This document shows positions 2,947-64,000 of a stretch of 64,000 nucleotides of DNA, in pieces. Below the pieces are notes generated by a model that saw only the letters and a program-made list of their open reading frames with translations, did not search any database and had not been told where the DNA came from. A program made the translations under genes and the position numbers. Position 1 is the stretch's first letter. Each line of letters begins with the position of its first letter. The DNA lies in NCBI GenBank assembly GCA_965285935.1, contig OZ260662.1, positions 121,272,001 to 121,336,000 on the forward strand, given 5' to 3'. Source of the stretch: Ophelia neglecta. Taxonomy: Eukaryota.

Positions 2947-2949
2947 TTA

Positions 2950-10600: not shown

Positions 10601-10808
10601 AATACACATAAAAAGATAAGGCAACCAGGACGGGTATGAAAGGGAAAATGTAATCCAAAACGGGGCTGTGGGAAAATATTGCAACAGAGCGTGTAAGGAC
10701 TATAGTATATCTGCCACATGAGTATTGAACTTTGATATTTGATTGCAACTATGCAACTAAAAACTCCGTCCCCAAAGAACGAGTATACAGCTCAGTTATG
10801 TCTAAATA

Positions 10809-18916: not shown

Positions 18917-21900
18917 TTGCATAACATAATAAGTGTTCTTTTCCTGTGTGTAGCCTACCTTTATCATCCTATTGATTGGATTCCAAAAACAGCCTGTATT
19001 GAAGCAAAATATAAATGCAACTAATACAATTTTGATCCATTTTATGCCTATTGATTAGCCTGTAACCCGATACAATTGTCACTGTAGGAAATCCAATCAT
19101 GCTCCCCATCCCCTTTTCGCCACCTGCATTTATGTTGGTAGCGAAACGCAATGCAATGTTTACACTGCAACTAGAATTCCACCCATTGAATACTCTGAAT
19201 TACGACTTAATGACCGGCGCTGTAAATATATATGCCTATCGTCACCTTCAACTCAAAATTATTTCTATACAAGGTAAACAACGGTATTAACAATTCTATA
19301 TATGTAAATATATCCTCTAAGAGGGTGTTTAATATATTTGACATATATTTGACATATTTCAAAAATGCAGGTTGTTAGGATAAATACAATTATTGGTGTT
19401 CAGTTTGTGTGCCGTTTGAAGGCAACAAATCATTAGCTGCCATAATAAGATCCCATTAAGTGTAGTCTGCTTAAAAATGTGGAAATCATTATCTACCATA
19501 ATAACAAACATACATCTCCTTGTACTGACACCTTATAGGGTGTCCGCTAAAGAATATATAACATAGGTTTATAACGCGGATCGCGCTTACAGTTGACATC
19601 TACATATTTAATATTATTGATGGTATAATTAAACAAATGGCTAAGAAATGAACTAAATCTTGTATAGGGTAAAGGTAAAATCACCTGCTATTGGTATAGT
19701 CGCTATGACATTCTACCAGCTAAGAAACAGAAATCCTTTCCTTTCTAAATATCACATAGATATATAATATATGTCTAATTACTCATATAATACATGGTCG
19801 AATAACCTATACTTTCTATATAAATGTAGACCAATAGCAAATCCCAAAGGAACTAGCATCCCACAGTTTCCAGACTGTATAATGTGATAGATGGTTGAAT
19901 ATATGAACCTGCTGACATCTGTTTTCGGTCATGAGATATAGATCGATACTACAACCGTAAATGTGGTTCTGACCCTATGCCCCCTTTCTAAACCCGCCTC
20001 TCCAAATGATCCCCCAGTGTACTATACTAACTTCCTCTGCCATCAGTGGCACTTGACACATATATAATCTCTCACATTATAAACACTCCTAAAATATTAA
20101 ACCACAATATGTATAATTTTGTAAGACTGTTACTCTCATCAAAGAACCCCAAGACTGCTGGATTACTTTCAGACTTCGATGGCATATTCATTATCATCGT
20201 CGAAATCTCATTCATTTCCGTATTGCTTTGGAAAATCCCCCGAGGTTGAATGGCCGCCAGGTAACAGCATCGACAACAGAAAATCAGTATCTATTCACAA
20301 TTTCGAACACTTCCGTATTTTATTATTTCTAATCGTGGCGTGAAGTTGTAGAGACGGTATATGTAGTGGGTGCTCAGGGGGTTACCACCTTTAAATTTAA
20401 TTCACAATGAAACTAATATCTAAATTTTCACATTTCCTGGGAGACATCTAGTTAATGGATTTGGGTTGGGGGTTATTGTAGTGGTAGTATGTTTTCCTGT
20501 GTTGTTCGTGGTCAAACAATCATACACCAAACCTAAATAAGATTCGTGCGGTGCTTACGGACAAGGAAAAACTTCTGTAGAAAGTTATATGAAATCGTCT
20601 ATGGCTTGAAAATTAAAGAATCTTCCCATATAAAATCCGAACGGTAATATGTGCTCACTGTCAAAACTCGCATAACATGCAAATCTGTCTATGATACCTA
20701 TTGTGTCCGTCATGAAAACATTAAGCCTTATACCTGTGATATGTGATTAATGCAACACCACATGACTTCAGTCAAGCCACAAACACATTTGTAGCCGTAC
20801 TGCGAGGCCTAAATAAATGTAAAATCTAACCATAATGGCAACATATCGACAAAATTAATGTCCTACAATTATCCTCAATACCTAAGTTTCCTTTCCTTGA
20901 CCCCTTGCAATTTATTTTTATGTGACTGGGATATTTGATATCACATGCAAGAATATTTGATTAGCAGTAGTCTCAACAGATGGCGACGCCCGGTTCATAG
21001 TTAAATACAGCTTTTGTTGGGGCGGATGTAGATAAGGCCTCCCACCAGATTAGATTGTGAGTGTAAAGATTGGAATAGAGGTACATGTATATATTTAGGC
21101 GGTGTCCAATTATTATTAAAAGGTGACTATCATTTACCCCTCAAACACCCGAATAAGTATTGGATACCAGAGAGTGTGGCGATTGGGTTTGGATGGGGGA
21201 TGTGGTTGTAGTCATAAATGTATGATTAAAGGGAGGTACGAAAATATGAAGTCGAATTGGTCCGAATAAATTGTATTAAGTCATTAGTAGATGTGTGCAA
21301 TATACGTCCTGTTTTGAATTAATATCGGTTATGACTTTTAAATACATTTTTCCCCTCGTCTTCAGATATAAAGCCTTGCACTATGTTAACACAGGAAATA
21401 TGAATCCGCCCCACTTGGCCTTGTTTGCCTAACGACAACATAACCCGCGCTGCAATTTTCTATGTTTATCGCCTTGCTGAACTCACTGCATTGCATCTGA
21501 GCGATAAAACAGTCAATTATAGTCATTCGCAGTCTGTTTACATCGCAGGTCGGGGATATAATTGTCACAATTTCCAATAAAATTTGATATCTACAGACCA
21601 TTCTGGAAAGCCACCTGGGATATATGCGTTTTAAACAAAGCGCATGCTCTTTGACGCGTGCGTTGTAAGGTAAGGGCATTTCTAGTAATATACAAAGATA
21701 TTGAGATACTAAACAACACTTCTCCAGTGACTATAATCGTTAGATTAGGCTGGGATTAAAATAGATATCTTAATCTCAGGATTAGGTAAATCTACATGTC
21801 ATACTCAGGAGCTTCTGACGAGGAGTAGATAATTTATATCAGCAATTGGATACGCACACCCCCTGTCCTACTAGTCAATCACGGACAATCATAACAGGTA

Positions 21901-24900
21901 TCCTGGCACACTCCATTCACTACAGCCTGGCCTTATAACGCCGGTTTTTGCATACGCCTGATCATTTCATTCATTTTAGCTCGTGGAGCCGTAGCCGGGG
22001 AAACATTTGTTTCTCTATGTGTATTTAAGGTCCAAGTGAGGTCGCCCTAACTCTAGTGTCCTTCTCTGTGTACAATTTAGGGAATTTATTAACCAATAGC
22101 ATTAATTCAATTAAGTGTTTAGGAAGTATGGGTGACCAGAAACCTTTTCGCCCGCGGCTGCATTATAGCGCGTGGCATGGTTATTCAGGCTGACGATTTC
22201 TCAGGGGTTCTACCTTCACTGGGGCTGCTACCAATTGGGCCTGCGCTAGAATATATTAGCTGGTGTAATTGGGACATACTCAGTTGATTTGGCAGATATT
22301 AAATGACACTATTCGGGAGGGCTCTCACGACGGTCTTATAATAACGTAAATAACTTAATTATGTAAAAGCCTATCACCAAAGTTCGCTCTGCAAAATCTA
22401 ATTTTAACCCGTATCTTTAAAACAAAGTCCAAAATACAAGCCATACAACTTCTTTCAAAATTTCAAAATTAAGTCACGCTGCCAAACTTAAAACTAACGA
22501 GGCCTTTTGCATAGACCGGCATTTCTCATCTGGCACTGAATATATGGTTAAACTGAGACTCACTTTGATGCTTTTTATACGTGACTTCACACATTTTATG
22601 GCTTTTGTGGGTGAAGTATACACATTTTCATGCAATCTAACTCTCCCAGCCCGCGCACATCCGTTCCCCTGGAGAGCTGATAGGAACACCCTAGTTTGTC
22701 GACTTCCCAGGGGGGGGGGGGGGGTAGCGATCGGTCCCGGGCAATAGCGCTTGTAAAATCTGAAAATATTTAATTCAATGAGTACCAATGAGTCGTCCCA
22801 GACTTTTTGCTACCAATTGTCAACAGCAGGTATTTTATTATTTTTTATATAAATTGATATGCCACATTTCCCAAAGCAAAGTACCCTCTGTATATTTGGG
22901 CTGTTTGAATTAAAAAAAAAGGGGCAAAGCGTAATTCGACTTATTTATCCTACTTGACTACAAAAATTTATGGTGAGAGACAGCGAGAGGTTATTCCTGG
23001 AACTTGCTAGATATAGGAAAGAGGATACTAGTTTTCCAGGCTTTCACGGACCATGTCTCCCGCTAATTAATATGCCCAATACCAACTGGGTGACAAGAGT
23101 GATGGGAGATTTGGTAGGTTTGTACGTATGTTAGTAAAATGACTGTGATACAACCCACTGTCATGCATAAAGTATTTCCTCTCATATTAAAGTATACAAG
23201 TGTAAGATTTGAGAGCCATACAGTAATGTATTTATTAACACACACTCAATTGAGAGAGGATTGACCTTTGCCACTTTGTCACTTAACATTATAAGGTAAC
23301 CAGGATAGGCCTCCTGAACAAACACCATTTGCCCCTCCTGTAATAATTCAATGACCTTGCACTGTCAATACGATAGCAATATGGGCCATGTTTACTTTGT
23401 GATACTGTAATCCAGGTAGTGTTCTGGTGCAACAGGCAATGATAATCTCGCAAAATCATTGCATGCACACTGCAAGGTGTTGTGCAGTTATTTAAGTGGG
23501 GGTGATTTTTTGCGCTAATATTCCATCGCGACTATTTCCCTGTTTACAGTATTCAACACAGATATTGTGGACTGAAAGGGAGTAAGGTGTCTGGTGGCGA
23601 CAACTGAAAAAACATTTAACGCATTATATGTGTGAAATGAAAAAAAAACATAAAGTAAAAACTATTAAATGTATGTTCACTCAATGCAATATAATAAGGA
23701 TAGTTTTATTGGAAAGATTTGGCTGCAAACAGGTGGCAGCATGCTACATCGGCGATTCTCGAACCCATAAATTGCTGGTTAAGGTTAGGATAAACAAAGC
23801 AGGGTATCACATATGACAATGTTAATAGCAATGAATATGTCAGATACATGTTAAAATAAAAAGCCGTTTTACCTGGTGACCTATTATCTTCACTATACAT
23901 TCGTATGAAAAGATTTATCTATGTGTCAAACCAATACAGCTTTAATACATGGCGCCTATACTAAGGTGTGTCGCATGCAGTGAGATCTGGGTCTCTTGAG
24001 TACCCGAGAAATCCTTGACTTGACTTGACAGACGAAGCTCAACATACACGCCGTGGAGAACGGTCTGTTAACAAGGCCTATAAGGGTAGGAGCTATAACT
24101 CGCTTGATGGCTTCACATTCACTTCAATGGAATAGGATGGGTGTTCACAGCGATATAGCGTTTTGGGGAAACCTCTTTAAAGAAAAACGGCCCAGATCCT
24201 GCGTGTCCTTGATATCCGTCCCTGCCAATGTAACAAGCGATGTTTTATTGCAAGTGCGCCTGGCACCGAGCCAGCGTGAACTATATGCTAACTTGCTAAA
24301 CACTATACACTGCATTGCAATGCGACCGCCAGGTAGCGGTAGCAACGGGAGCACTACCACAGCAGAGACATAAATAATGCAAACTAGGTCTTTCCCTACT
24401 AGTTGTTTGTATATTGTGATAGATGACGGCTGTACTAACGAAGGAAAGTGACGAAATGACAAGCTCATTCGTGGAATGCCGAAAGTCGAAGAAGTTAATC
24501 ACAAATAAAGTGGTTTATAAAAACACAGGTTAAATCAGGAAGGCAAACGAAGACCGCGAAAACTTTCCCAATAAAAAGCTATAGAACACAAGCCGGCTCT
24601 CGGCCCCAACAGCCGCCGCGTAAGATCAAAACTTTCTTCCAAGTCTAAATGCAAGATCAGACGAAAAGTAATAGAAAATATTAAAGCACAAAGAGGAATT
24701 TGGTAACTGACCATAGTAAACGTCCCTCTTCTTACCTATCAACTCATATTTCACCCTCGAGAATGCAATTCTAACTTTTACTCCCATGCACTTATAAAAG
24801 TTTGTAAGAAGATTATTTTCCAGACACCTCCCCCCTCACCTCTACAGTTATCTAATGCTGATTCCCTTACTGCCATGCCTGAGGATACAAAATAGTGACT

Positions 24901-27900
24901 CAGAAACCACACGAGCTATGCTTTGAGCCAACTCTATGCAGACCATCCCATGACAATACATTGAGTATATACAACAAGCCTCCCCCGTACCTTTGGGTAC
25001 AACTATAGTTTAGCTTGTCTGGTGATAGTGATCAGTAATCTACCTCACCAAACGCGAACTCCCGTAAACTGGCGTCCTTCGTGTAGTACAATGGAATAGA
25101 CATTTTTCATCAACACTTCCGATGATATTTGTGATAAAAGGACCGAACCTTATTACGGAAAGCTAAATGCACCCAACCAATTGTATTCCGCAAGTCGTTT
25201 GGCCCATTGACGTATAAATCGCAAACTGATATCATCAAATCATAAAATCCAGGAGGGCACGTCAGTTTGCTTACACATCAGTTTGCTTACACATGTGGTA
25301 AAGATCGCTCAAGTCAATCATCGATAGTAAGGAATGCAATATTAGAAATTTTGGACGGAGGGGGGCTAGTAGAAATGTAGTATTTCTGTCGAACGGCCTC
25401 ATACCTGCCCCTGTTTTAGCAAAATTACAGAAAAGGATTCCTGTACCTGATTGGCCAAATTTGAATACCCAAATAATAACAGCCATCTATTTTATCTCTA
25501 AAATATCTACCCCCCCCCCCCCTGTATTTTGCCAATGCTGTTTCCTAATGAACTCTTAGACCAGTAGGGATTTAAGGTATTGATTTTCGTCCCAAACCGG
25601 AATATTTAACGCCGAGGTGGTTTCACACATATTGATGGCTTGGGAGGTGTTAAGGGAGGCAAAGGTTGCAAGAAGGCGGTATATGTGTGCGGAAGGGTTG
25701 GGGGTTGGGGTATTTGGGATAAACGACTGTCAGACGAAGTTGACAATCGGGATAATATGACAATGTCTTATGACTTGTCTGCTCAAGTAGGCAGTGCCGG
25801 TTTCCTGCCTACTAATGCCTTTTCCCACCGCCAGGTAAATTGTCATATGACAGTCAAGACAAGACAATCCCAATTCTTGTAGAAACTGTGGAAGGTCAAG
25901 GGAAATACATCGTGTTCTATTGAATAGTCTCTGTTGCATTTACTTATTGGAGAACATCTTTACAGAGTCTTGTATAAAGGCATGCGGGTAGCAACACAGC
26001 AATGCGTCAAAATATTCCATCTCGAACGAAAATTTGAAAGCTTCCCTATTATGTCCATTCAGGTCTATAGGACCTCTTCGGAGCCAGAGGTGGACCTAAG
26101 CCCCACTGCATTCTCTGTTATACTAGGTTATTCTGTCAAATATAGTACAATATGAAACAACTGGCAATTTCAGATGTGATTAAATGTTCCCCTCACCCCC
26201 CCCCCCCCTACTCCACCCCCACCACACACATCTGTTAACAACTGACAGATCTAGAGAGGAGGTTTGCAGAAATCTCACCCCCTCCCCCTCCCAATTAACA
26301 ACTTTTAGTCATAGATGGGGCTTGGGGGTCTTGACGCCCGTCAGAAATCCAAGCCCCACCCAACCCCCATATAGCAGTGACAGATCTAAAGGGGATCCAG
26401 TCCGGGCGTTTTGGGACGACATATTTATTTTATATTTTTCTAAAGTACCAAGCAGCTACACTTGGAAGCGTCAATAAGCAAACCTGACCAGCATACACCA
26501 TAAAGTATCAGTCTATACAGGTTCTTTCTGGGACAGAATAAATAAATATAATAAGCTTAAATGTTCCCTGGCTTGGTATATTTATATTCTGTAGTATTAA
26601 AAACGTCAGAGTGTCGGATCTTTGAGGGAATTTGTCAATATTATATTTGGCACTATTCCTGCTATATCAAGTCGGTTGCTTTGTCAGAGTGAACCATTCA
26701 AAACGAGCCTTATTCTTGCTTAAATTATCCTACCGCTTGTATAAATAATTACCAGCTGTCTAACTATTGTTTTTACTAAAGATGTGCAATGTGTAGCTAA
26801 TATTATGCCTAGGAGTTTAAATGATTAGATTTCAATATAAAATACAACGTTTGGGTAATTCATTGACTACTATCTTTATAAATATTATATTTCATAAGTA
26901 TCTACATAACAGCGAAAACAAACCATATATATCTCTGGGGAGTTAATCAACCAACAGCCAAGCTAGTTTTCCTTCACTTCCTTCATATAAGATTCAGCAT
27001 TAACTCTATAAATTGTGTTGTACTAATAACAAGTTCAGTCAGTAATGAGGCAATAAACGGGAGTGAACACACAGGTAGGTAATAAAGGCATCTTGTGGGT
27101 GCATAGGGCATCTGTGGCTTATTTTTCGAGACAGCCATTTTGTGTGCACTCGTGCCGTCGGTGAGCGATAAACGGTTGCGGAGTTTCCCGGATGGTGTCA
27201 CCACCCTACACTCAGATATTAGTTCTTGTATGGGCACATATTGCCTAGTGCATGTAGTTATAAACTATACTGTCCTCATTATTATAGGGTCCCTACCCAT
27301 GTACCGTTTGATGTAGCATACGTGCACTGTGATACATACTGTCCAGTGACTGTCTTTGAACAGTCATCTGTGTCCACAGTGTTTGTCACCGTTCATAAAC
27401 TACATTTTTATAGTGATTATAGCATAGTGTAATACTGATACAAAAGGGTATAAAGGGAAGGCCACCAACAAAGATCTCGACCCACTGAGTTAAGGGGTAA
27501 TTAATTGAGGGGTTGCGTGCCGGTTAGGGTACGTGTCAATACTGTAGTATTGCGGTCTGAAATGTAAGTGTCATTGTTAACAGTGTTAACAAGAATAATG
27601 CCTACCTATTTCTGAGGTTCCCAAGAAATCACTGTTACACCATTCTTGTCAACTATATACTTAACAACAGACGTCCATAGGAATTGGCAGTTGCCATTGG
27701 TATAAATAAAATGTTGCTCGTGTGTTTCTTATGAGTTCTTATATTGAAACTTAAGGGAAATCATGATGATAATAATCAACTTTTCGTCTCTAATGACTTG
27801 ATTCTAGTTAGTTATATTAATTCTTGAGTATTCGGTGTTGAAAGCCGGGAAGCTTGTGTATCGGTTACAAGCTTAGAGCGAAGGCTGCCGGTCGGGTTGG

Positions 27901-34700: not shown

Positions 34701-37471
34701 CGCGTCCGTTTAACGGTCTGTTATCAGGAAACAGTATGTATGTAGTGTTTTCTAAACAGGGCCTTTAAAGGGCGGAGATATGGTTTGATTAAGGGCTCCA
34801 CTTTCCCTTGAAGGATATTAGATAGTTGTTTACATCAAGAGGGTGGCTGTTGGAAATTTATTTGGAGAAAACTGGTCCAGAATCCGTTTGTTCCTGTTAA
34901 TCCGTCCCTACACTGCTTGACAACAAGGCCAATGTACAAGACCACGTTTACTACAATTGTGCTTGGCAAGGAGCCATGGTGTACTGAATTATAATTTGAA
35001 AAACACCAGATACGAATCATTTCAATGCATGGCTATTAAGAAGGTGTTTCTGCCGACTGAAATGGTATCTCAATGCCTACCAGGGCATGTTTGAAGGTTC
35101 AACATGTATTAATCATCATCTGGTCCCGTTGTCATACATGATGGTATATTTAATATGATTGCATCATTGTCTAATGACAGCGACAGGTCCATCACCACAA
35201 CAGAGATACATGTAATGCAATGCTTATATGTCCAAATATCTTAGTGTGTTTGCGGCATTAGGATAAGGTCGTACACTAAAGGTATCCTGACGCAAACGGC
35301 CCAGTGTTGTTTTCTATCCGCCAAAATTCTCGTGTAGGACTTATGCTGGAATTTATCCATTTACACTCGTACTGAATTGGACAACCCAGTAGTCATGTCC
35401 TGCTATAAGACGTGCATTTGTACCTTGGACTTTATCGTATTACTATTCTCGATATACAATGTGTAAACTTGTGTGCACTGGACTCTTGTCGTTCATTAAG
35501 AACCCTTGTGTTTTTTATAAGTATAATCAAGAAGATGGGGGAGATTGGGTTCGGAATAATTGGATCAAATATCTGAGAAGAGGTTTAACCCCAACTAAAT
35601 ATTATCCCCCGTATCCACCCTCCATAAACAACAAAGCCGTCCCCAATCCCCAAACCCCACCACACCCTCCACCAACCCCAGCCCCCCCCCCCCGACACAT
35701 CCTCCATCAACCCCACCCCCCCTCAGGGTTACTGCTGTTAAACACCTTCAATGGCAGTGCCGTATAATATGTAGTGGAAAGCAAAATCCAGTAAAATCCA
35801 GCGATCAAAATTTCAGGCAATCCACGGATAAAAAGCCGTTTATTCATATACATTTCATGGTTTTAAAAGTTTAAAGTGTTCACCGACTCACAGTTCCACA
35901 CACATCGATTGCAGAAATAAAGACCCTTCCCTCATTAATCACAGCTTCACCCACAAATAAACATACATTATTCAATGCTTTATAGCCTGCCAATTGCTTT
36001 GGATCTATGTGGAGGAGGGAGAGGAGGAGGGACGGGGCGAGTGGCGTCAACTTTGACTTGGAGGGTGGGGCATTTCTATTCCCTTCCAGCAATGGACACA
36101 TTGTGGACAGTAAATACCTACCCTTGCCCCCCCCCCCCCCCCGTAGACAGAATAGGGGGTTCGGGCTCCAGTCCAGACCCCCCCCCCCCGACACACACCC
36201 TCCATTAAATGCAATAATGGGTCCGGATCCCCTTCCCATAACCACACCCACCCCCTGAGAAAAGAAAAAAAGGGAACCCGCGAATGTGTGCAGACAAGTT
36301 TTAAAGAAAAAAATCCCGCAATGGTTTAGAAGATACCCATTCCTAGCTCGGACGGAAACTGGTCACCAGACGGTAGACGCCGGGATAGCACAAAAGCAAA
36401 ACTCCTGTAGCGACTTGCAGCTGAGGTGTAAAAAGAGAAAATTTTACAACTAATCAAACCTTAAAAATCCGCAGCTATAAAAATATTTACTTGCCAGGTT
36501 ATGTAGAATCGGGAAAGTCATTATTCAGCTGAAGCCGGAAAATTAACATTTATGTAAAAAAAACCTGGAATAAAAGCTAGAAAACGTTAATAAAAAAGCC
36601 ATCTGGTGTTGTAAAGTTCCCTTAAGGGCCTAGAGGTGGCTGCTTGGGAGTGAGGTAGTCTCATGGGCCTAGGTTTGTTTGTGGTTTAAAGCCCGGAGCG
36701 GTAGCTCACTGGGTATATATATATATAAGCCTTAGACATTCCTGCATAAATTATCCATAACCTTGCATAAATTACTAACTGCTGTCAAATTGTTGGTTTT
36801 ATTATATATGTGTAAGGTGTGGGTAATATTATGCTAAGAAGTTTTAAAAGATTAAAGCATAATATATAATACAACATTTCGGTAATTCAGCGAATCTTTG
36901 ACAACTATCTTTATAAAAAGAGATTTTAAAAAGTACGCGGTGTCGACAGAACAGCGTAAATAAAACCATATATGGTCATTGGGGAGTTAATCCACCAGTT
37001 AGAACAGCCGAGCTGTAATCCTTAACATTCTTCATATTAATTTCAGTGTTAACTGTCTATATTGTGTTGTAGTAGTAACACATTGAGGTAGTAATGAGGA
37101 GGTGAAAGCACTGATAGTTATAAACCGTATCTTGTTGGTGCAAGGGCATAAGTGTCTTGTTTTTCGAGACAGGCATTTTGTGTGTATTCATGCCTTCGAT
37201 GAGCGATGATTTTTCGGAGTTGCCCGATAGGTGACACCACCCTACAGCCCGGTATTGGCTATTATTGAATGGGTACAAGTAGCCTAGTGCATGCAGTTAT
37301 TAGCCACCGTGGCGTCAATATGAGAAGTCACCTACCTCATTTACCGTTTGGTGTAGACACTCTGGCATTGTGATATGTACCGGCAGCTACATTGGGTGTT
37401 CCTAAACTCTTTTCAAGGAAAATATCAGCTACATTTGGTATAGTTTTTTCACACCCAACTCCCTTGTGTAC

Positions 37472-37730
37472 TGTTGTGGAGGCACGGCAACTGACTATTT
37501 CCCAGGCGCTCAACCTGCATGTGCATTATCCGAAGACCACTGGCGCCCCTAGCGACCGGATCGGATCCAGGGACTGGGACCAGGTCACCAGCGGGACAAA
37601 CAGTCGATCTCGAGAAGTCAATGCAGTAAGTCGCACAAGCGGTTAAATTAGTCTATATCTTGTATCCTTGTATAAATTGTGATAAATCTACGCAGAATTA
37701 GCCTGTGAACCCAAGGCCAGATCCTCGACA
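37472..37730 (+). repeat. 5' LTR (259 bp)
   Basis: TGTTGTGGAGG...CCTCGACA. I count 4 substitutions versus the 3' LTR. Confidence 0.97.
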
Positions 37731-37731
37731 T

Positions 37732-37742
37732 TGGTGTTGTGA
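37732..37742 (+). promoter_or_regulatory. Primer binding site (possibly tRNA-His)
   Basis: TGGTGTTGTGA lies 1 nt after the LTR. It matches the tRNA-His-type PBS TGGTGCCGTGA if two G:U pairs are allowed. Confidence 0.55.
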
Positions 37743-38564
37743 ATTACAGGTACGTTGTGTGGATTTTTCTACAGTTTTCATTGTTGTTCTGTCAAACTTG
37801 CGTATGGCAATGGCCTTTAATTTTTGACAGAAATTACGATCCCTTTGTGTGCAGGCTGATGTGTGTTTATTGTCATCCTTTAGGCTGACGTTATTGAAGG
37901 CATGCCAATCAGCTATCAAATGCTATTATTTCACCACTGTTAACCTATGGACATTGATACTCTGTACTATTGTGCAATAATTATTGGTGCCGCCATTTCC
38001 TTTGATCTTGTTCGGTACCACCATCTTGCTTCTTCAAAATTTGGCGGGAAAATTTCTTTGTTGGGATCCAGTTGTGGGCTTCTAGTGTTTAACAACAACC
38101 ATCAAGTTCAATTAATTCCCATATCTATCATTCTTTGCATAATTATCTATAGACTGATAACTAAATCGGAGATTGACAATTCTTGGCAATGTTATGAACT
38201 TTGATGGGGACTAACACATTCAGTAATGGTTCAATAACATTCTTTATTTTCTGATTGAATAATTATTACAATATTGGGAACACAACTGTGAATTGTATGT
38301 CATTGATTGTTAAGTTTCATTGATTACAGTACATGAAATTTACAATTCATTGATTATACATTTTTACATATTTATTAAGTACTTCATACGCACCAACATT
38401 GTCGATCTCTGATCTTGATAATGTAGTATGACATCATACTGAGAAATTACAACCATAATGAAATTAATTTAAATTCGTGTGTGTAATAAAAGGTTCTACT
38501 GTATTGTCTTTAGATAAGTGCTAAATTGTCTGGATACATAACGTTGGTATTGAACTTGTCAATC

Positions 38565-41170
38565 ATGGCACATGCAAACAAAATTGATGTGAATGATGTC
38601 ACAATTGACGAGTTACAGAATTTTTCTGGCATTGGTCCTGCAACTGCCCTTGCTCTAACTGAAGGTAGGGACAAGGCTCGAATAATGGATATCGAACTTG
38701 GTGCTTTCATTAGGCCCCAATTTTATGCATTAGTCAGGGAGAATGGTCTCGTTGGGGACGGGTATGTATCGGATGAACCAGAAAATAACCTTCCTGCCAA
38801 ACCACCTCCTGGATTCCCTAAAGAAGAGAAACCGGTCGGTGGGGATTCTCAAAATTCTGCCATTAACTACCAACCTAGTGAGGAATTTCATAATTTGCGT
38901 TTGGAAATGACAGATATTTTACATAGGCAGAATAATATGATTCATTCTAATACAAATGAAATCCAAAAGATTTCGCAAAGCTTAGACAAGCAACAGGATG
39001 AATTTGCAAAAATGAAATTATGTTTCAAGAAGCAAGAACAAAACTTTTTAGATATAAAAGGTTTGATTGAGTCAGTGAACAAACCTAGGGGTGCTTCGAC
39101 CAGCCAAAATAGTACCCCAAGCAGATCAATTGCCTTGGTTAGAACTAAAGGGTCAAGGAGTCTGCCAGAAACTCCAAATATTCCACCTAATAGTTTAGAT
39201 TCTTGTCACCAAACTAGATACTCTCCCCAAGATGTTAGGCAAGATGCCCGTTTTATACTAACTAAACCGTTAAGGGCAATCCCAAAGACTTTAACCTCGG
39301 GTGCAAATATGGGGGGCACTAGCAGACCTTCTGACGGCTCGAGAATACCTATAAGCCACTTTCCAGGAGTGTATGCTATGCCACCATCATCCCAACTAAG
39401 CAAGCCCTACCCCTGCAGTCACAGTGTACCCGAATATCATACCAAGGAGTATGGTGGGTCGGAAGAGGTACAGCATAGCGTAAAGTATGATTACCCCCAG
39501 ATCAGGTTTAAACCAACTAGCAGTCTCCCCACCCATCATACAAATTCACACAGTATGATAAAACAGGCCCATGATCCTAAATTCACTCCAAGACCCATGT
39601 CTCTTGATGGTGCTCGCAGGCCTACCTCTGATGGGACAAGACATGAGGGTCAAAATCATACCCAGTCGTATGGTATTCGTGGGCCCACAGAAGCCAGTCA
39701 TAATGCATGTTATGAAAATGAGAGTGGGGCCCCCAGGGGTGGTGCTGACCCCTTCGGGAGGGGTGGTGATGGTCGGGCGTTTGCTTGTGGCGTGCAAGCA
39801 CCAACAAACCAAGGTTTTGCGTATGGCAATGGTGTTGGCGTCGTGTCAAGCTCACCACCGTTTGCACACACTACTACAAACAGCATGGTGGATCCCCCCA
39901 GGATTGTCCGTCCTAACAGGTATGACTTTTCACAGCCCCCGCCCGAGGCCATCGGTCTGGGCATGCCGGGGCCCGTGCCAGGGCCACCCCATACCACGGA
40001 GTGTGATGTGTCTGTTCCCCCACGGGCGGACAGGAAGGTTTTTCATGCCCTGGAGTATGGTAAACCAACAAGGGACATTGGCTCAGCTAACCAAAGCATG
40101 GGAAGCTCGAGTAACTCATTAATTACTAATAGTATGGGCAATACTCATGATACCCCCGACCCCTCACAGGTACTGGTAAACACCCTGGTACAGGCTTTAG
40201 AAAGGACTAGGAATCCTAATCCCCCACCAACGCAAGGGCGTGGTCGTCCCCATTTAGGAAGCCTCCCTACCTTTGGCGGTGGTGGAGTCAAATGGCCAGC
40301 TTTTTTCTTACAATTTGATAGAATGGTTTCTAGGCTAGGACTCACTACAGAAGAAAAGTTAGATGCACTAATTGGTACTTTGAAAGACAAAGCTCTAACA
40401 TATTATTCAAAATTGTCCCCAAACACTCAAAATAATTACACGGAACTGGTTGAGAAACTACGGTTCAGGTTTGGCCCTGAAGAAACAGCTTCCGTGTCAA
40501 GACGCATGTTAAAGAGTGCTAAACAAGCATTAGATGAGAGTTTAGTGGAGTTTGCTGAACGTGTGCAATGGCTGGCAGCAGATGGCAACCCACAGGCCAA
40601 TGAAGAGTGCCTCAATGCGATAGTCATTGACACCTTTTTAGAGGGTTGTTACGAAAAAACAGCTGCACTAAACGCAATGAACGCTGAGCCTAGCACACTT
40701 GCTGAAGCTATGCGTTTGATTCAAGTTTGTAAAACTAACCAACAACACTTGAAAATTAGGACAGTAAGAGTCGCCGAAGACGATGGTGAAATGAATGTAA
40801 GGGCCATCAAGGCGACAAACAGTGGTTCAAAGAACTCTGTAGAAACAGATAGACTTAATGTACTGGAGAACAAAGTTAATGTCTTAGAAAAGCACCAAGT
40901 TGGCATAAAAGAGAGCTTGCTTCAGCTCACAGAACTAGTAAAAGGCATGAGAATGGACCTAATTAGTAAAGATACCCCCAAAAAGAATTTATCCTTTAAT
41001 ACTACCCCCACCCCACCCCCACCCCAAACAGTCCAAACAGGAGACCCAATAGGAGGTCCCCAGGTAGTGGTAGTCCGCTGTTGTGTTTCCGCTGTAAAGA
41101 GGCGGGCCACTTCCAACGGGATTGTCCTCTAAATGCGGAAAACACTTCCCCAGGCTACTCAAAAAACTAG
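38565..41170 (+). CDS. gag: Gag: N-terminal HhH motif, coiled coil, long low-complexity region, capsid domain, CCHC knuckle; one frameshift at ~41000-41025
   Basis: ATG 38565 (ATCATGG). Capsid-like LPTF..G..W..F..QF...KL..L...L...A..YY...FG region. The knuckle CFRCKEAGHFQRDC (41084-41125) is in a shifted frame ending SKN* (TAG 41168-41170). Confidence 0.9.
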
Positions 41171-41221
41171 AGATGACTGGTACATGTGACCAAATACCAG
41201 TCTGTTGTCAAAATGGTCACA
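41161..41221 (+). promoter_or_regulatory. -1 programmed ribosomal frameshift signal (slippery heptamer plus H-type pseudoknot)
   Basis: A AAA AAC at 41161-41167, then a 7-nt spacer. Stem1 GACTGGTA 41175-41182 / TACCAGTC 41195-41202. Stem2 TGTGACCA 41185-41192 / TGGTCACA 41214-41221. Confidence 0.85.
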
Positions 41222-41418
41222 CTTTTCATGGACCGAATTCAAGGTATTCAAGCATGCCTGAAAGTAAAGGGGAAAAACAAATAAGTGAACACAGTAGTAT
41301 ATGGGGGGTTGGAAAATGCAGTGCTCAGAAGGACAGCAAAATTGTACATTTATATGAGGAGCCATCTGACAGTATAGTCAAGCATCTTAGCCATGATGGT
41401 AAAAAGTTGGCTTATACT

Positions 41419-42140
41419 GATAACAACCTAGCAGGATTTGGGTACTATTTGACTGAAGGTGGCGAAATAAGAGACATTGAAACAAACAAAAAATTTCAAT
41501 TTGAAGTCTCAGAAGATAATTCCTACAATCTAAAAAGGTATGAGCAAATTGGAAACATACTCACAGAATATGTGTATGACAAATTGGTGTCTCAATGCCA
41601 CCTGCAGAAAATGTATCTCGGTTCTGTAACAAAACAAAACGAGACAAATGGCTTTGTTTTTGTGAGTGAGGATGCATTTACCAACCCTGATAAATTGCTA
41701 TTGATCATACCCGGTGCTGGCATGGTAAAGGCAGGACAGTGGTCTAGAAGGGTTATGAAAAATGACAGTCTGGAAAAGGGCTCTCCAGTGCCTTATATCA
41801 ATAAAGCCATTGAATCAGGTTATGGTGTGGTTGTCCTCAACCCAAATCATAACACATTTATAGTTGATGGGACGCAAATGAATATAAAGGGTAGTGAGGA
41901 TCCCATTAGTCATGTACTGTCTGTCTGGGACCAAATTGTCTCAAAAACACTTGCCAAGCACATAGCTATAGTTGCCCATAGTTATGGCGGGGTTATCACT
42001 ACAATTCTGGCCAATACGGCAAAGGATTTTTTGAATAGGGTGTTTGCCATTGCCTTTACAGATTCAGTTCACAATTTGTCTCATCAAATTATCAAACAAA
42101 TGCTGTAAACTGGGTAAAGAGTGACAAGCCACTGGACACG
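41419..42140 (+). CDS. FAM172A/ARB2-family alpha/beta-hydrolase-fold domain in the Pol frame (C-terminally truncated, one frameshift at ~42095)
   Basis: Motifs collinear with FAM172A (ARB2A): LAGFGYY..GEIRDI, KRYEQIG.ILTEYVY, FVSEDAFTNPDKLLLII.G.G.V.AGQW.RR, PYI.KA...GYGVVVLNPN, VWD, VAHSYGG (41971-41991), AFTDSVHN. After the shift comes NAVNWVKSDKPLDT (42099-42140). No introns. Confidence 0.92.
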
Positions 42141-42143
42141 CTT

Positions 42144-45100
42144 TTGTTTTTGTTTTTGCAAATGTTAATTCCAAACTGTATCAAGAAAGAATTAATTGTT
42201 CCGTTTGCCCTCATAAATAGCAAATATGGCCAGCCTGCTTTTGTTGCTGTCAAAAATTCTACCAGCAAGTTTGTAACTTTAAAAAAGGGTCAGCTTATGG
42301 GTAGTAGTACGTGTATCGGGGAATTGGTGGAGGAAGACTTAGGACAAGTTACCAGCGACTCAACTTTGCAGACACGTGCCACTTCAGCCCCCTGCATTTC
42401 TGAAGTAAGGCAGGAGGACGACCCTGAAATGATAAAGGTTGAAGAAACTCTGAAAAGTATTAGTTACCCTTTTGTGTCAGCTGATGACCTGCGAACGATA
42501 TGTCCTCAACTTCCCATACATTTAAGGGCAATGTTTGTCAAGTCTTGTGAATAACTGACAAAATCACAGGCAGAACAAGTGGCAAAATTGCTTTTGGAAT
42601 TTGCTGATACATTCGCTAGACACGATTTAGATTTAGGGTATTATACTGAAAGTACTCACAAAATTGATACCGCAGAGGCACGTCTAGTCCATTCCAGAAT
42701 GCGTAGAACCGCCTTGCAATTTCAGGGTGAGGAGGAGAAGCATGGTAAAGATGTGTTAGAGGCTAAAGTAATGAAACCTTCAACATCAGAATGGGCATCA
42801 GCGCCAGTATTAGTAAGAAAAAAATGTGGTGCAGTAAGATGGTGCATAGATTACAGAAAACTAAATGAAGTAACTGTAAAAGATGCATTTCCGCTTCCCC
42901 TTATTAGTGAATGTATTGACAGTCTGTATGGTACTGAATACTTTAGTACACTTGATCTGGCTTCTGGATACTGGCAAATAGGTATAGATGAAAGGGACTA
43001 ACACAAAACTGCGTTTGTGACAAAATATGGATTGTTTGAATGTGTACGCATGAGTTTTGGTCTGTGTAATGCACCAAGTACCTTCATGCGAGCAATGACA
43101 TTGGTTTTGCAAGGATTATTGTGGAAAGAGATCTTAGCTTACCTCGATGATGTCATAGTGGTGGGAAAAACTTTTGAAGACCATCTATCAAATTTAAGGA
43201 CAGTGTTTGGGAGGTTCCAAAAATATAATTTGAAGTTAAAACCCCAAAAGTGCTTGCTATTCAAAATTCGGGTTCCCTATTTAGGTAAAATAGTTGGAAG
43301 GGATGGGGTTTCCATAGACCCAGACAAGATCAAAACTGTTATTGACTGGCCAACACCTAATTCATGTCATGACGTTCAAGTTTTCATGGGACTGATTAAC
43401 TACCATCGAGACTTCCTTGAAAAATTAGCTGAAATGGCAGAGCCTCTTTATGAGTTGATAGGCACAAAAGCTGTCTTTGAATGGGACGAAAGTCGAAACA
43501 GGGCTTTTCAAGACCTAAAGTCACTAGTAGTTTTGGCCCCGGTACTAAACTATCCCGACCCTGAGGCCCCTTTCATACTGGATGTGGATGCGAGTAACTT
43601 TGCCATTGGAGCAGAGTTATTACAAAAACTGAATGACAGGGAATGCGTGATTGCTTTTGGTTCATTCCGATTGACACCCGCCCAACGCCGATATTGTACC
43701 ACTCGTAAAGAGTTGCTATCTGTCGTCCGCTTTACACGCCAGTACAGGCACTATTTATTAGGGCGAAAATTCACGATCCGAACCGATCATAACTCCTTGG
43801 TATGGTTGATGAGGTTTCGTACTCCAGAGGGTCAATTAGCACGTTGGCTTGAAGAACTGAGTCAATATGATATGGATATACAGCACCGCAGTGGAGCTAA
43901 ACACTGCAACGCTGATTCCCTATCACGCATGCCAGATGCACTAGCTTCGTGTGATTGTTATGAGGCAGGCGCTAGTTTAAACACCTTACCATGTGGGGGT
44001 TGCCCGTACTGTACCCGAGCCCAAGAAAGCTGGGCACGATTTGAAATTGATGTGGACGATGTAGTTCCTATAGCCACAAAGCGGGTAACCGTGGAAGATG
44101 AAGCCAGCAAGGATTCTAATTGGTTACCTAACTACACCCCAGCCCAATTAAGATCACTACAGAGAGCCGACCCCGACTTGCACACCCTCATCGGTTGGCT
44201 AGAATCCTCAATGGTGCCATCCATGTATGACCTGTACTTGTCAAGTCCCAGTACAAAGCATTACTGGACCAATAGGAGCCAACTGAAATTCAAATCTGGC
44301 ATATTATATTATAGATGGGAGGGTCATACTCCCAAAATGTTGTTTGTTGTTCCCCAGGTGCTAGTACCTGAAGTAATGACATATTGTCATGACAGTATCA
44401 GTGCTGGGCATATGGGCAGAACACGAACAATACAGTTTGCAAAGAGCTGTTTTTATTGGTATGGGCTAAATACTGCACTGAAGAACTATACCAATTCGTG
44501 TGCAAAATGTCATATCAGCAAACAACCCTCTAGAAAGCCAAGGCGAGCATGGTCAATTTTCAGGCGGGATGCCCAATGGAGAGAGTACACCTAGATATTC
44601 TGGGGCCATTCACTCCTAGCAAGGATGGCAATATTTACATCCTGATGATGATTGACCAGTTTACTCGCTGGGTAGAATGCCATCCCTTAAAAACTCAGAC
44701 TGCCGAGGTCTGTGCTAAGCTGGCAGTGGACCAATTTTTTTCCCGTTTCGGGTGTCCATTGGAGTTACACACGGACCGGGGAAAAAATTTTGATGGGAAA
44801 ATATTTGGGGCCCTCTGTAAATTGCTAGAAATTATTAAAACTCGCACCACTCCTTATCGCCCATCTGCAAATGGGGAAATAGAACGCCAAAATAGGAGTA
44901 TCCTGCAACTCATTAGGGTATACCTAAAAAACAACCACAACACATGGGATGAGTCTCTACAACAACTGGCAGGCGCTATGAGGTGTGCTGTTAACAGGAT
45001 GACAGGATATACTCCTAACATGTTAATGCTGGGCCGTGAGATAGCACTGCCGTTGGACATTATCATGGGAATAGCTAAAGCTAATAACACGCCTAGAGCA

Positions 45101-54450: not shown

Positions 54451-55090
54451 ATCCACTACCTGTAATGCTGTTATCTACCACCTGTACCCACCTGTAATCC
54501 ACTGTTATCCACTACCTGTAATGCTGTTATCTACCCCCTGTACCCACCTGTAATCAACTGCTATCCACTACCTGTAATGCTGTTATCTACCACCTGTACC
54601 CACCTGTAATCCACTGCTGTCCACTACCTGTAATGTTGTTATCTACCACCTGTACCCACCTGTAATCCACTGCTATCCACTACTTGTAATGCTGTTATCT
54701 ACCACCTGTACCCACCTGTAATCCACTGCTATCCACTACCTGTAATGCTGTTATCTACCACCTGTACCCACCTGTAATCCACTGCTATCCACTACCTGTA
54801 ATGCTGTTATCTACCACCTGTACCCACCTGTAATCCACTGCTGTCCACTACCTGTAATGCTGTATTCTACCACCTGTACCCACCTGTAATCCACTGCTAT
54901 CCACTACTTGTAATGAAGTTATCTACCACCTGTACCCACCTGTAATCCACTGCTATCCACTACCTCTAATGCTTTTATCTACCACCTGTACCCACCTGTA
55001 ATCCACTGCTATCCACTACCTGTAATGCTGTTTTCTACCACCTGTAGTCCTGTACCCACCTGTAATCCACTGCTATCCACTACCTGTAAT
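54451..55090. repeat. 56-bp tandem repeat, ~11 copies
   Basis: Unit ATCCACTACCTGTAATGCTGTTATCTACCACCTGTACCCACCTGTAATCCACTGCT. Confidence 0.95.
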
Positions 55091-62800: not shown

Positions 62801-63187
62801 CTGCAAAGAGATCCAATCATTAGAAATACATGGTCTTAAGCAATGACTTGCATTAAGATATTTAAAGAAGGAAGGCCAGGTGATTTCAAAAAAGGTGTCA
62901 TTTTTTGTTTCATGTTGCTATTGTTTTCTGTTCAAATAATATATTTATGAAAATGTGTATGGTGACTCGTATAATATATAAATATTTCTGAATCTCAATC
63001 TATGAGCCCTTGAGCTATCACAACCTTTTTGTACTTTCCCATTCTTTTAATTGGAGATAAACACCACCAAGGAATAATAGAAGTAAACAAAGGAGAGTCT
63101 GTTGTAGATGGAACGGTAATAGATTGAATCAAGTTATGATGTCCTATTTAGTCATTTACAAGATACTGTCAATAAAGTGATGTATTA

Positions 63188-64000
63188 ATCCAAAAGAGAA
63201 CCCCACAGTACAGAGCATCCAAAAGAGAACCCCACAGTACAGAGAATCCAAAAGAGAACCCCACAGTACAGAGAATCCAAAAGAGAACCCCACAGTACAG
63301 AGAATCCAAAAGAGAACCCCACAGTACAGAGAATCCAAAAGAGAACCCCACAGGACAGAGAATCCAAAAGAGAACCCCACAGTACAGAGAATCCAAATTA
63401 GAACCCCACAGTACTGAGAATCCAAAAGAGAACCCCACAGTACTGAGAATCCAAAAGAGAACCCCACAGTACAGAGAATCCAAAAGAGAACCCCACAGTA
63501 CAGAGCATCCAAAAGAGAACCCCACAGTACTGAGCATCCAAAAGAGAACCCCACAGTACTGAGCATCCAAAAGAGAACCCCACAGTACTGAGAATTCAAA
63601 AGAGAACCCCACAGTACAGAGCATCCAAAAGAGAACCCCACAGTACAGAGAATCCAAAAGAGAACCCCACAGTACAGAGAATCCAAAAGAGAACCCCACA
63701 GTACAGAGCATCCAAAAGAGAACCCCACAGTACTGAGCATCCAAAAGAGAACCCCACAGTACTGAGCATCCAAAAGAGAACCCCACAGTACTGAGAATTC
63801 AAAAGAGAACCCCACAGTACAGAGCATCCAAAAGAGAACCCCACAGTACAGAGACTCCAAAAGAGAACCCCACAGTACAGAGAATCCAAAAGAGAACAGT
63901 ACAGAGAATCCAAAAGAGAACCCCACAGTACAGAGAATCCAAAAGAGAACCCCACAGTACTGAGAATCCAAAAGAGAACCCCACAGTACTGAGAATCCAA
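63188..64000. repeat. 29-bp tandem satellite, ~28 copies, running off the window end
   Basis: Unit ATCCAAAAGAGAACCCCACAGTAC(A/T)GAG(A/C). Confidence 0.97.

What the first reader, a model, noticed from the sequence alone, without database searches (positions are those of the whole stretch)
41168..42200. Gypsy retrotransposon encodes a FAM172A/ARB2 (Argonaute-binding family) domain as the first domain of Pol
Seen: an intronless ~240-aa domain collinear with FAM172A (AGQW.RR, GYGVVVLNPN, AHSYGG, TDSVHN, NWV.S..PLDT) lies between the LTRs. It is in exactly the -1 frame entered at the gag slippery site. Its last motif (NAVNWVKSDKPLDT) reads on without a stop into the Pol linker preceding RT. Established: fission-yeast Arb2 is part of the Argonaute siRNA chaperone complex, and vertebrate FAM172A/ARB2A is reported to interact with AGO2. 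Inference: the element captured a host mRNA and built it into Gag-Pol, possibly as a counter-defence decoy against Argonaute/PIWI silencing, or as a chromatin-targeting module carried in the particle. I know of no description of this domain in LTR elements but cannot search.
Basis: partly seen in the sequence, partly recalled or inferred. Interest (0 to 1): 0.93.

Follow-up and report, generated by a model that had tools for sequence, protein, structure and literature searches.

The report
Gypsy retrotransposon carrying host Arb2 domain
A jumping gene of the Ty3/Gypsy type has swapped its own protease for an intron-free copy of a host FAM172A/ARB2A (Arb2) domain, built in frame into its polymerase protein; the anatomy is real and apparently undescribed, but whether the stolen domain helps the element is not shown.

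Summary
Window 37472-48092 is one 10.6-kb Ty3/Gypsy-type LTR retrotransposon with 259-bp LTRs, a GTAC target duplication, a PBS and a PPT. After a canonical -1 slippery site (A AAA AAC, 41161-41167) and the gag stop, Pol opens with about 85 linker residues. Then comes an intron-free Arb2 domain (Pfam PF22749, E 2e-44; AF2 pLDDT 89; best structural matches Clr3 and Hda1 Arb2).

- No aspartic protease is encoded anywhere; Arb2 sits in its slot.
- The domain is trimmed: the N-terminal region and the last strand, conserved His and KDEL-like tail are absent.
- This copy is decayed (three frame changes, two stops). One frame change separates the last Arb2 motif from the rest of the domain.

The lesion load fits post-insertion decay, so Arb2 was probably in frame with RT at insertion.

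No second copy of this family and no host gene could be retrieved, so family-wide retention is untested. One other Gypsy (P0181, metagenome) carries an intact Arb2 after integrase.

The Argonaute-decoy idea is untested. It is also weakened, because the vertebrate AGO2-contact loop is absent.

Verdict: real, a new variant of a known kind, function open.

The parts
37468..37471 (+). Target-site duplication GTAC, 5' copy
   Evidence: GTAC lies directly before the 5' LTR and directly after the 3' LTR.
37472..37730 (+). 5' LTR (259 bp, TG...CA)
   Evidence: identical to the 3' LTR at 255 of 259 positions.
37732..37743 (+). Primer-binding site TGGTGTTGTGAA, complementary to a tRNA 3' end (...CACCA), 1 nt after the LTR
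   Evidence: sequence read. The tRNA identity was not determined.
38565..41170 (+). gag. It has a long low-complexity N-terminal part and a capsid-like Retrotrans_gag region at 40377-40646. A frame change lies between 41001 and 41075, and the stop TAG is at 41168-41170.
41084..41125 (+). CCHC zinc knuckle of gag (CX2CX4HX4C)
   Evidence: zf-CCHC, E 6e-7; sequence.
41161..41167 (+). -1 frameshift slippery heptamer A AAA AAC, immediately before the gag stop
   Evidence: The -1 frame from this site is the Arb2 ORF frame.
41175..41202 (+). Hairpin (8-bp stem) 7 nt after the heptamer; a possible frameshift stimulator
   Evidence: The local fold is -12.2 kcal/mol with z only -1.6, so support is weak.
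41162..41418 (+). Pol N-terminal linker (about 85 residues) with no recognisable domain
41419..42140 (+). Arb2 (FAM172A/ARB2A-type) domain. It is intron-free and has a frame change near 42097-42102 before its last motif. It ends at ...PLDT, so the host's last strand, conserved His and KDEL-like tail are absent.
42141..42160 (+). T-rich (TTTTG)3-like stretch at the 3' boundary of the host-derived segment
42141..42554 (+). Pol linker between Arb2 and RT, with no protease signature; ends at the in-frame stop 42552-42554
42813..43286 (+). Reverse transcriptase (RVT_1; YLDD present), interrupted by the stop at 42999-43001
43482..43868 (+). RNase H
   Evidence: RT_RNaseH, E 1e-31.
44349..45400 (+). 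Integrase. It comprises H2C2 zinc domain 44349-44525, a frame change within 44549-44594, catalytic core 44570-44863 and C-terminal domain 45308-45400.
46040..47347 (+). ORF3: intact 435-codon orphan ORF between integrase and PPT
47822..47833 (+). Polypurine tract GATGGGGGAGAA
47834..48092 (+). 3' LTR
48093..48096 (+). Target-site duplication GTAC, 3' copy

Best explanation
Shown:
- The stretch is the start of the Pol reading frame of a structurally complete but decayed 10.6-kb Ty3/Gypsy-type LTR retrotransposon.
- Straight after a canonical -1 frameshift site, Pol opens with a short linker and then a processed, end-trimmed copy of a host FAM172A/ARB2A gene (Arb2 fold).
- The domain sits where the aspartic protease normally lies, and the element encodes no protease.

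Inferred origin:
- Recombination, or a template switch with a co-packaged host mRNA, swapped the protease for host cDNA. This is the way transducing retroviruses acquire cell genes.
- The chimera then inserted at least once. Protease was either supplied in trans by a helper element or dispensed with.

Inferred working:
- The domain is made only as part of the frameshifted Gag-Pol fusion, so it travels in the particle.
- Without a protease of its own, it may stay covalently joined to RT and integrase.
- It lacks the His-bearing last strand and has PG where most orthologues have HG. It is therefore more likely a docking or dimerising module than an enzyme.
- The most likely role is tethering Pol or the pre-integration complex to a nuclear host complex, functionally like the chromodomain of chromoviruses. 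The candidate complexes are chromatin or the co-transcriptional machinery, to which Arb2 folds bind.

I put about 0.9 on the anatomy, about 0.7 on in-frame translation at the time of insertion, and about 0.45 on any benefit to the element. The confidence given for this explanation as a whole is 0.45.
For: - Anatomy: LTRs, target duplication, PBS and PPT; slippery site and frame; Arb2 identity (E 2e-44).
- Fold: pLDDT 89, pTM 0.86. Foldseek top matches are Clr3 5IKK and Hda1 Arb2 5J8J. The profile hits Clr3 by sequence.
- Intron-free against intron-rich host loci.
- No protease: no Pfam protease match in any piece, and no D[ST]G in any coding frame of the element.
- Decay fits an element that was intact at insertion. 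The LTR divergence of 4/259 predicts about 55 substitutions and 2.4 new stops in 2362 codons; 2 stops are seen.
- The domain keeps 31 of 33 columns that are at least 90% conserved in 156 orthologues.
- Its composition matches the rest of Pol.
- A distant Gypsy (31% RT-RH identity) has an uninterrupted 1871-codon Pol (PR-RT-RH-IN) ending in a complete Arb2 with Ser, Asp and His. This is P0181 on locus L001, and the domain sits where chromoviruses carry their targeting domain.
- Arb2 folds dimerise and bind histones (PMC5036196). They are reported to contact RNA polymerase II (PMC6753149). FAM172A binds AGO2 directly and dimerises (PMC10205598).
Against: - Only one decayed copy is available. No second family copy or host orthologue was found, so retention under selection is unproven.
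- Loss of the protease and trimming of the domain are also what a dead-end transduction would look like.
- The domain's branch (0.85 against a median of 0.39) lies within the range of host lineages. A recent capture from an unsampled host therefore cannot be excluded.
- No binding partner has been tested.
Confidence: 0.45

Rival explanations
1. Pure passenger. A single transduction event produced a protease-less, helper-dependent defective element. The Arb2 segment is in frame only because an out-of-frame insert would have cut off RT and IN. It does nothing for the element.
For: - The protease is missing.
- The domain is trimmed and lacks the conserved His segment.
- HG is changed to PG at the oxyanion-type motif, where H is found in 79% of orthologues.
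- No other copies are detectable in any collection.
- Zero of 80 metagenomic Arb2 loci have an RT nearby.
- The branch length is compatible with an ordinary host gene.
Against: - The domain is sense-oriented and in frame, and is trimmed of exactly the N-terminal and KDEL-like ends that would misdirect a cytosolic polyprotein.
- It keeps 31 of 33 conserved columns.
- A second Gypsy lineage keeps an intact Arb2 inside an intact Pol ORF on a very long branch of 1.57. That speaks for maintenance in that lineage.
Confidence: 0.35
2. The domain is a protein decoy that binds Argonaute/PIWI and blunts small-RNA silencing of the element.
For: - S. pombe Arb2 is part of the Argonaute chaperone complex (established knowledge).
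- Mouse FAM172A binds AGO2 directly (PMC10205598).
- Retrotransposons do repeatedly capture small-RNA pathway genes as counter-defence (PMC13534243).
Against: - The AGO2 contact in mouse depends on E229 in the CK2-NLS loop. That loop is absent from this domain and from invertebrate orthologues.
- The domain would be made only at frameshift-limited levels and locked into Gag-Pol. That is poor stoichiometry for a decoy.
- There are no GW/WG repeats; only one WG is seen, in the linker.
- Nothing was tested here.
Confidence: 0.1
3. RNA-level anti-silencing. Small RNAs made from the captured segment target the host FAM172A mRNA, as TART does with nxf2, piwi and aub fragments.
For: The precedent in PMC13534243.
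Against: - Those captures are 140-235-bp non-coding fragments about 76-95% identical to the host gene.
- Here a whole domain is kept as an open reading frame in the Pol frame.
- Nucleotide identity to the host gene is unknown. Protein identity to every known orthologue is at most 53%.
Confidence: 0.03
4. Nested insertion or artefact. A LINE-made processed pseudogene of FAM172A landed in this one copy after it integrated, or the assembly is chimeric.
For: The segment is intron-free, and only one copy is known.
Against: - There is no poly(A) at the 3' boundary, which is instead (TTTTG)3-like and T-rich.
- The mRNA 3' end, which LINE-made copies always keep, is missing.
- The segment is in frame with the slippery-site frame.
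- The protease would have to be deleted at the same spot.
- There is no compositional break.
Confidence: 0.04
5. Enzyme swap. The alpha/beta-hydrolase-fold domain works as a serine hydrolase or peptidase that replaces the aspartic protease.
For: - It occupies the protease slot.
- Ser (AHSYGG) and Asp (TDSVH) are kept.
- The structural neighbours include serine peptidases and esterases.
Against: - The His-bearing segment, which is nearly invariant in orthologues, is absent.
- HG is changed to PG.
- No hydrolase activity is known for the family. The Hda1 Arb2 pocket is blocked by its dimer arm (PMC5036196).
Confidence: 0.03

Closest known systems
Chromoviruses (Ty3/Gypsy elements with a chromodomain after integrase)
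   Same: A host-type chromatin- or protein-binding domain is fused in frame to Pol of a Gypsy element. The P0181 element carries Arb2 in exactly that position.
   Different: - The domain is of a different fold.
- In the window it lies at the N-terminus of Pol, in place of the protease.
- A targeting role is proven for chromodomains and only inferred here.
Orchid Ty3/Gypsy elements with an ALKB m6A-demethylase domain (PMC9289625)
   Same: A rare, recent acquisition of a host protein domain by Gypsy elements.
   Different: That case is in plants, the domain is added rather than replacing a core enzyme, its activity was shown, and it is family-wide.
Acutely transducing retroviruses (Gag-onc fusions; established knowledge)
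   Same: Processed host cDNA is recombined in frame into the genome, replaces viral genes, and makes the element replication-defective and helper-dependent.
   Different: Here the context is a genomic retrotransposon of an unidentified, probably invertebrate, host. The cargo is not a growth gene, and no helper has been identified.
Drosophila telomeric retrotransposons that captured nxf2, piwi or aub fragments (PMC13534243)
   Same: A retrotransposon captures a gene linked to small-RNA silencing.
   Different: Those are non-LTR elements carrying short non-coding fragments that act as RNA. Here a whole protein domain is translated within Pol.
Host FAM172A/ARB2A, S. pombe Arb2, and the Arb2 domains of Hda1 and Clr3
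   Same: - The Pfam family and fold are the same.
- Identity to animal orthologues is 49-53%.
- Ser and Asp motifs are kept.
   Different: - It has no introns.
- It lacks the N-terminal region, the C-terminal strand with its His, and the KDEL-like tail.
- It lacks the vertebrate CK2-NLS loop.
- It is embedded in a retroelement polyprotein.
Partly non-autonomous LTR elements such as BARE-2 (own knowledge)
   Same: The element keeps most of its genes but lacks one essential function and would depend on a partner.
   Different: The missing function here is the protease, and its place is taken by a host domain.

Membership tests
Ty3/Gypsy (Metaviridae-type) LTR retrotransposon | Paired LTRs (TG..CA) with a short target-site duplication, a PBS and a PPT | tested here: met
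Ty3/Gypsy (Metaviridae-type) LTR retrotransposon | RT/RNase H most similar to Ty3, and integrase placed after RT-RH | tested here: met
   Ty3 Gag-Pol 7Q5B at E 5e-53 and Ty3 RT 4OL8 at E 1.5e-48; domain order.
Ty3/Gypsy (Metaviridae-type) LTR retrotransposon | gag with a capsid-like domain and a CCHC knuckle, and gag-pol joined by a -1 frameshift | tested here: met
Ty3/Gypsy (Metaviridae-type) LTR retrotransposon | Retropepsin (aspartic protease, D-S/T-G) at the start of Pol. This is typical of autonomous members. | tested here: not met
   There is no protease Pfam match and no D[ST]G in a coding frame. I therefore file it as a protease-less Gypsy-derived element, not as an autonomous member.
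Arb2 / FAM172A (Pfam PF22749) | Profile match above the curated threshold | tested here: met
   152.3 bits against a threshold of 26.8.
Arb2 / FAM172A (Pfam PF22749) | Alpha/beta-hydrolase-like Arb2 fold as in Clr3 and Hda1 | tested here: met
   pLDDT 89; 5IKK and 5J8J are the top matches, although TM-scores are only 0.44-0.46; profile hit to Clr3 at E 2e-9.
Arb2 / FAM172A (Pfam PF22749) | Conserved Ser (AHSYGG), Asp (TDSVH) and C-terminal SAG...H..T segment | tested here: inconclusive
   Ser and Asp are present. The His segment, which is nearly invariant in orthologues, is absent from the element.
Arb2 / FAM172A (Pfam PF22749) | Binding to Argonaute | not testable with these tools
   Only literature on yeast and mouse is available.
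Vertebrate FAM172A AGO2-import module | CK2-NLS loop with the E229-type residue that splits the domain | tested here: not met
   In one search the loop is present in the fish orthologue P0070 and absent from the window domain and from invertebrate orthologues. Its role is taken from PMC10205598.
Integrase-linked targeting domain (chromovirus-like) | Extra domain fused to the C-terminus of integrase | tested here: not met
   In the window, Arb2 is N-terminal in Pol. The feature is met in P0181.
LINE-made processed pseudogene (nested) | Poly(A) tail, complete mRNA 3' end and its own target duplication | tested here: not met
   A target duplication around the segment was not searched for.
GW/WG 'Ago-hook' silencing suppressors | Repeated GW/WG motifs | tested here: not met
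   Reading the translations shows a single WG in the Pol linker and none in repeats.

The most novel reading that the evidence does not exclude
Arb2/FAM172A is a recurrent accessory module of Gypsy retroelements. It was either acquired twice or kept since an old capture, and the tree cannot tell which (AU test p = 0.77). It links the particle or pre-integration complex to the host's Argonaute/co-transcriptional chromatin machinery. In the window's family it has even displaced the protease, giving a Gag-Arb2-RT-RH-IN polyprotein that works unprocessed or with a helper.
Probability: 0.18. Interest if true: 0.85.

Novelty: new variant of a known kind. Interest (0 to 1): 0.6.

Why it matters
Fixed acquisitions of host protein domains by LTR retrotransposons are rare, and each one has been informative. 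Chromodomains guide integration, and ALKB edits RNA.

An Arb2/FAM172A domain is tied in yeast and mouse to Argonaute, histones and co-transcriptional regulation. Such a domain would be a new candidate interface between a retroelement and the silencing or chromatin machinery.

A Gypsy element that replaced its protease would also challenge the assumption that Pol processing by its own protease is indispensable.

It would also offer a natural handle on the poorly understood function of invertebrate FAM172A. All of this depends on showing that the domain is retained across copies.

Tried and rejected
- **Other copies in the window:** none.
- **Close relatives of the Arb2 ORF:** 5.8 billion clusters and 1.84 billion representatives gave nothing above 53% identity and no self-hit. 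The host genome is evidently not in those collections.
- **ORF3 as a family marker:** no homologue at all. There was no Pfam or PHROG match. The single-sequence AF2 model was useless at pLDDT 32.
- **Long Arb2-Pol fusions:** a region search with P0181 found only P0181 itself.
- **Public collections:** viral contigs were scanned three times, JGI metagenomes once and prokaryote genomes once. No family member turned up. Zero of 80 metagenomic Arb2 loci have RT or IN nearby.
- **Host identification:** Rfam, tRNA scan, Pfam on flanking ORFs and cluster names were all uninformative.
- **Paralogous empty site for the insertion:** the flanking segmental repeats stop about 90 bp short of the insertion site.
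- **Protease remnant:** similarity of the two Pol linkers to P0181 or to any fetched protein was not significant.
- **Independent capture in the window element and P0181:** not demonstrable. The careful tree separates them, with P0181 next to Clytia at 87/88. The AU test does not reject a joint clade (p = 0.77), and both are long branches.
- **Compositional break at the domain:** none.

For the alignment and tree I read the domain through its frame change with an X at the break.

Full report
**What is there.** Window 37472-48092 (+) is a single LTR retrotransposon insertion.
- It has two 259-bp LTRs (37472-37730 and 47834-48092). They are identical at 255 of 259 positions, begin TG and end CA, and are flanked by a GTAC duplication.
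- A primer-binding site complementary to a tRNA 3' end lies 1 nt after the 5' LTR.
- A polypurine tract abuts the 3' LTR.
- The internal part encodes gag, with a Retrotrans_gag region and a CCHC knuckle.
- After gag come the Arb2 ORF, reverse transcriptase, RNase H and the integrase zinc, core and C-terminal domains.
- An intact orphan ORF3 lies last.
- The RT-RH piece matches Ty3 Gag-Pol (7Q5B, E 5e-53) and Ty3 RT (4OL8) best among solved structures. The element therefore belongs with Ty3/Gypsy.
- The window contains no N. Nothing here looked human, and no spliced model had to be joined.

**The observation.** ORF 41122-42108 matches Pfam Arb2 (PF22749) at 152 bits (E 2e-44) over model positions 2-233 of 260.
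- Its best database relatives are animal FAM172A/ARB2A proteins at 49-53% identity. They come from a millipede, annelids, molluscs and a nemertean.
- An AlphaFold2 model built on 60 sequences is confident (pLDDT 89, pTM 0.86).
- Its best structural matches are the Arb2 domains of Clr3 (5IKK) and Hda1 (5J8J). TM-scores are only 0.44-0.46. Alpha/beta hydrolases follow.
- The sequence profile also finds Clr3.
- Host genomic loci recovered from metagenomes split the same residues into four or five exons over 2.6-4.8 kb. In the window they are continuous, so the segment derives from a processed transcript.

**Frames.** The zinc-knuckle frame ends ...TC A AAA AAC TAG. This gives a textbook slippery heptamer at 41161-41167 followed directly by the gag stop.
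- The -1 frame from it is the Arb2 ORF frame.
- An 8-bp hairpin starts 7 nt downstream, but its statistics are weak (z -1.6).

**How this copy is broken.** The copy carries three frame changes and two in-frame stops.
- A frame change lies between 41001 and 41075, between the gag body and the knuckle.
- A second lies near 42097-42102, between TDSVHN...IIKQ and the last Arb2 motif NAVNWVKSDKPLDT.
- A third lies within 44549-44594, in integrase.
- The in-frame stops are at 42552-42554 and 42999-43001.
- A simulation using half the LTR-LTR divergence gives about 55 substitutions and 2.4 new stops in the 2362 codons. Two stops are seen.
- The damage is thus what post-insertion decay predicts. The progenitor most likely had Arb2, RT, RH and IN in one frame. 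This last step is an inference.

- *No protease.* No piece matches any protease family, even at relaxed thresholds. No D-S/T-G occurs in a coding frame anywhere between the LTRs. The Arb2 domain occupies the slot between the frameshift site and RT where Gypsy elements carry their protease. The comparator P0181 has its protease there (LVDTGA and ILGRDFL).
- *Trimmed domain.* The host-derived segment starts at the Arb2 core, without the variable N-terminal region. It ends at ...PLDT, followed by a (TTTTG)3-like stretch. The orthologues continue with a nearly invariant SAG...H..T segment and a KDEL-like end, which are absent here.
- *Active-site-type residues.* Ser in AHSYGG and Asp in TDSVH are kept. 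The HG of the HGSG motif is PG, while H is found in 79% of orthologues. If the family is a hydrolase at all, this version is probably inactive.

**Is it maintained by selection?** This could not be settled.
- The domain keeps 31 of 33 columns that are at least 90% conserved in 156 orthologues. The host median is 0 deviations and the 95th percentile is 5.
- Its mean identity to orthologues (43%) equals the orthologue-orthologue mean (44%).
- In trees it falls in the unresolved animal polytomy, in no phylum clade. Its end branch is 0.85 against a median of 0.39, which is high but within the host range.
- Its GC3 and CpG depletion match the rest of Pol.
- These facts fit long residence under constraint. 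They fit equally well a recent capture from a host whose lineage is not in the databases.
- No second copy and no host gene were retrievable. The host was not identified.

**A second case.** Among 252 fetched Arb2 proteins, exactly one is fused to a retroelement Pol. It is P0181, encoded on an 8.2-kb ENA metagenome contig (L001).
- gag ends at a T TTT TTA slippery site just before its stop.
- An uninterrupted 1871-codon Pol carries PR, RT, RH and IN. After a long linker it ends in a complete Arb2 with Ser, Asp and His.
- Its RT-RH is only 31% identical to the window's.
- The careful tree puts its Arb2 next to a hydrozoan gene (87/88) on a very long branch of 1.57.
- An AU test does not reject a clade of the two element-borne domains (p = 0.77). 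One old capture or two separate captures both remain possible.
- Either way, an intact Pol with a much-diverged but complete Arb2 argues that Gypsy elements can maintain this domain. Its place after integrase is where chromoviruses carry their targeting domain.

**Mechanism.**
- Shown: the domain would be translated only through the -1 frameshift, as part of Gag-Pol.
- Inferred: with no protease of its own, it may remain joined to RT and integrase.
- Known activities of Arb2 folds include homodimerisation and histone binding for Hda1 (PMC5036196). A reported contact with RNA polymerase II is another (PMC6753149).
- For FAM172A, the known activities are dimerisation and direct AGO2 binding (PMC10205598).
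- The mouse AGO2 contact depends on E229 in the CK2-NLS loop that splits the domain. The element's domain, like invertebrate orthologues, has no such loop.
- I therefore favour a non-catalytic docking or dimerising role that tethers Pol to nuclear chromatin or co-transcriptional complexes. That role works like a chromodomain, and I give it about 0.45.
- The pure-passenger reading gets about 0.35, and the Argonaute-decoy reading about 0.1.
- RNA-level anti-silencing of the TART kind (PMC13534243), a nested processed pseudogene, and a serine-hydrolase substitute for the protease are each unlikely. The reasons are given under the rival explanations.

**Novelty.** Full-text searches for Arb2 or FAM172A together with retrotransposon, Gypsy or reverse transcriptase found no description. 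Host-domain acquisition by Gypsy elements is a known but rare kind of event (PMC9289625). This is a new variant of that kind, with the unusual twist that a core enzyme was displaced.

**Limits.**
- The case rests on a single decayed copy.
- No interaction was tested.

Noticed in passing
window 46040-47347 (+): ORF3 is an intact 435-codon ATG-to-stop ORF between integrase and the PPT. It has no homologue in 5.8 billion protein clusters and no Pfam or PHROG match. It contains a C-x2-C...H-x4-H zinc-finger-like motif and no obvious signal peptide or membrane segment. The single-sequence AF2 model was unusable (pLDDT 32).
   Followed up: partly
window 38526-40376 (+): gag is unusually long (about 870 codons). 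It has about 600 low-complexity residues before the capsid-like region and a sub-threshold helix-hairpin-helix match (HHH_3, E 1e-3) at ORF residues 17-50 (38574-38675).
   Followed up: no
L001 1-8179 (ENA ERZ1644696, NODE_73): A different Gypsy element. Its gag ends at a T TTT TTA slippery site (1959-1965). It has an intact 1871-codon Pol (PR-RT-RH-IN) with a complete Arb2 domain at the C-terminus (residues about 1600-1830). The source organism is unknown; its Arb2 groups weakly with a hydrozoan gene.
   Followed up: partly
P0121 (617 aa) and P0173 (2505 aa): P0121 carries two tandem Arb2 domains. P0173 is a 2505-residue metagenomic protein with an N-terminal Arb2 and no other recognisable domain.
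   Followed up: no
window 1-37400: The 37 kb upstream of the element consists of diverged segmental repeats at 67-88% identity. Examples are 2948-4661 against 10807-12533, 7364-9128 against 20485-22307, and 16379-17430 against 26816-27827. The element sits just past the end of one unit.
   Followed up: partly
window 50244-52356: Inverted repeat with 262-bp arms at 98% identity (50244-50505 and 52095-52356) enclosing about 1.6 kb. It is possibly a young foldback or TIR element.
   Followed up: no
window 54451-55090 and 63187-64000: Two tandem-repeat arrays. The first has a step of about 56 bp with copies 88-95% identical. The second runs off the window end and underlies the long ORFs at 63156-64000 (-).
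   Followed up: no
window-wide, e.g. 22-309, 22474-22788, 26184-26477, 35459-36258, 49283-50158: Many short ORFs on both strands encode PPPP or GGGG runs. This suggests a dispersed repeat carrying a C/G homopolymer. CpG observed/expected is 0.60 in the flanks and 0.1-0.6 in the element, which suggests a CpG-methylating host.
   Followed up: no
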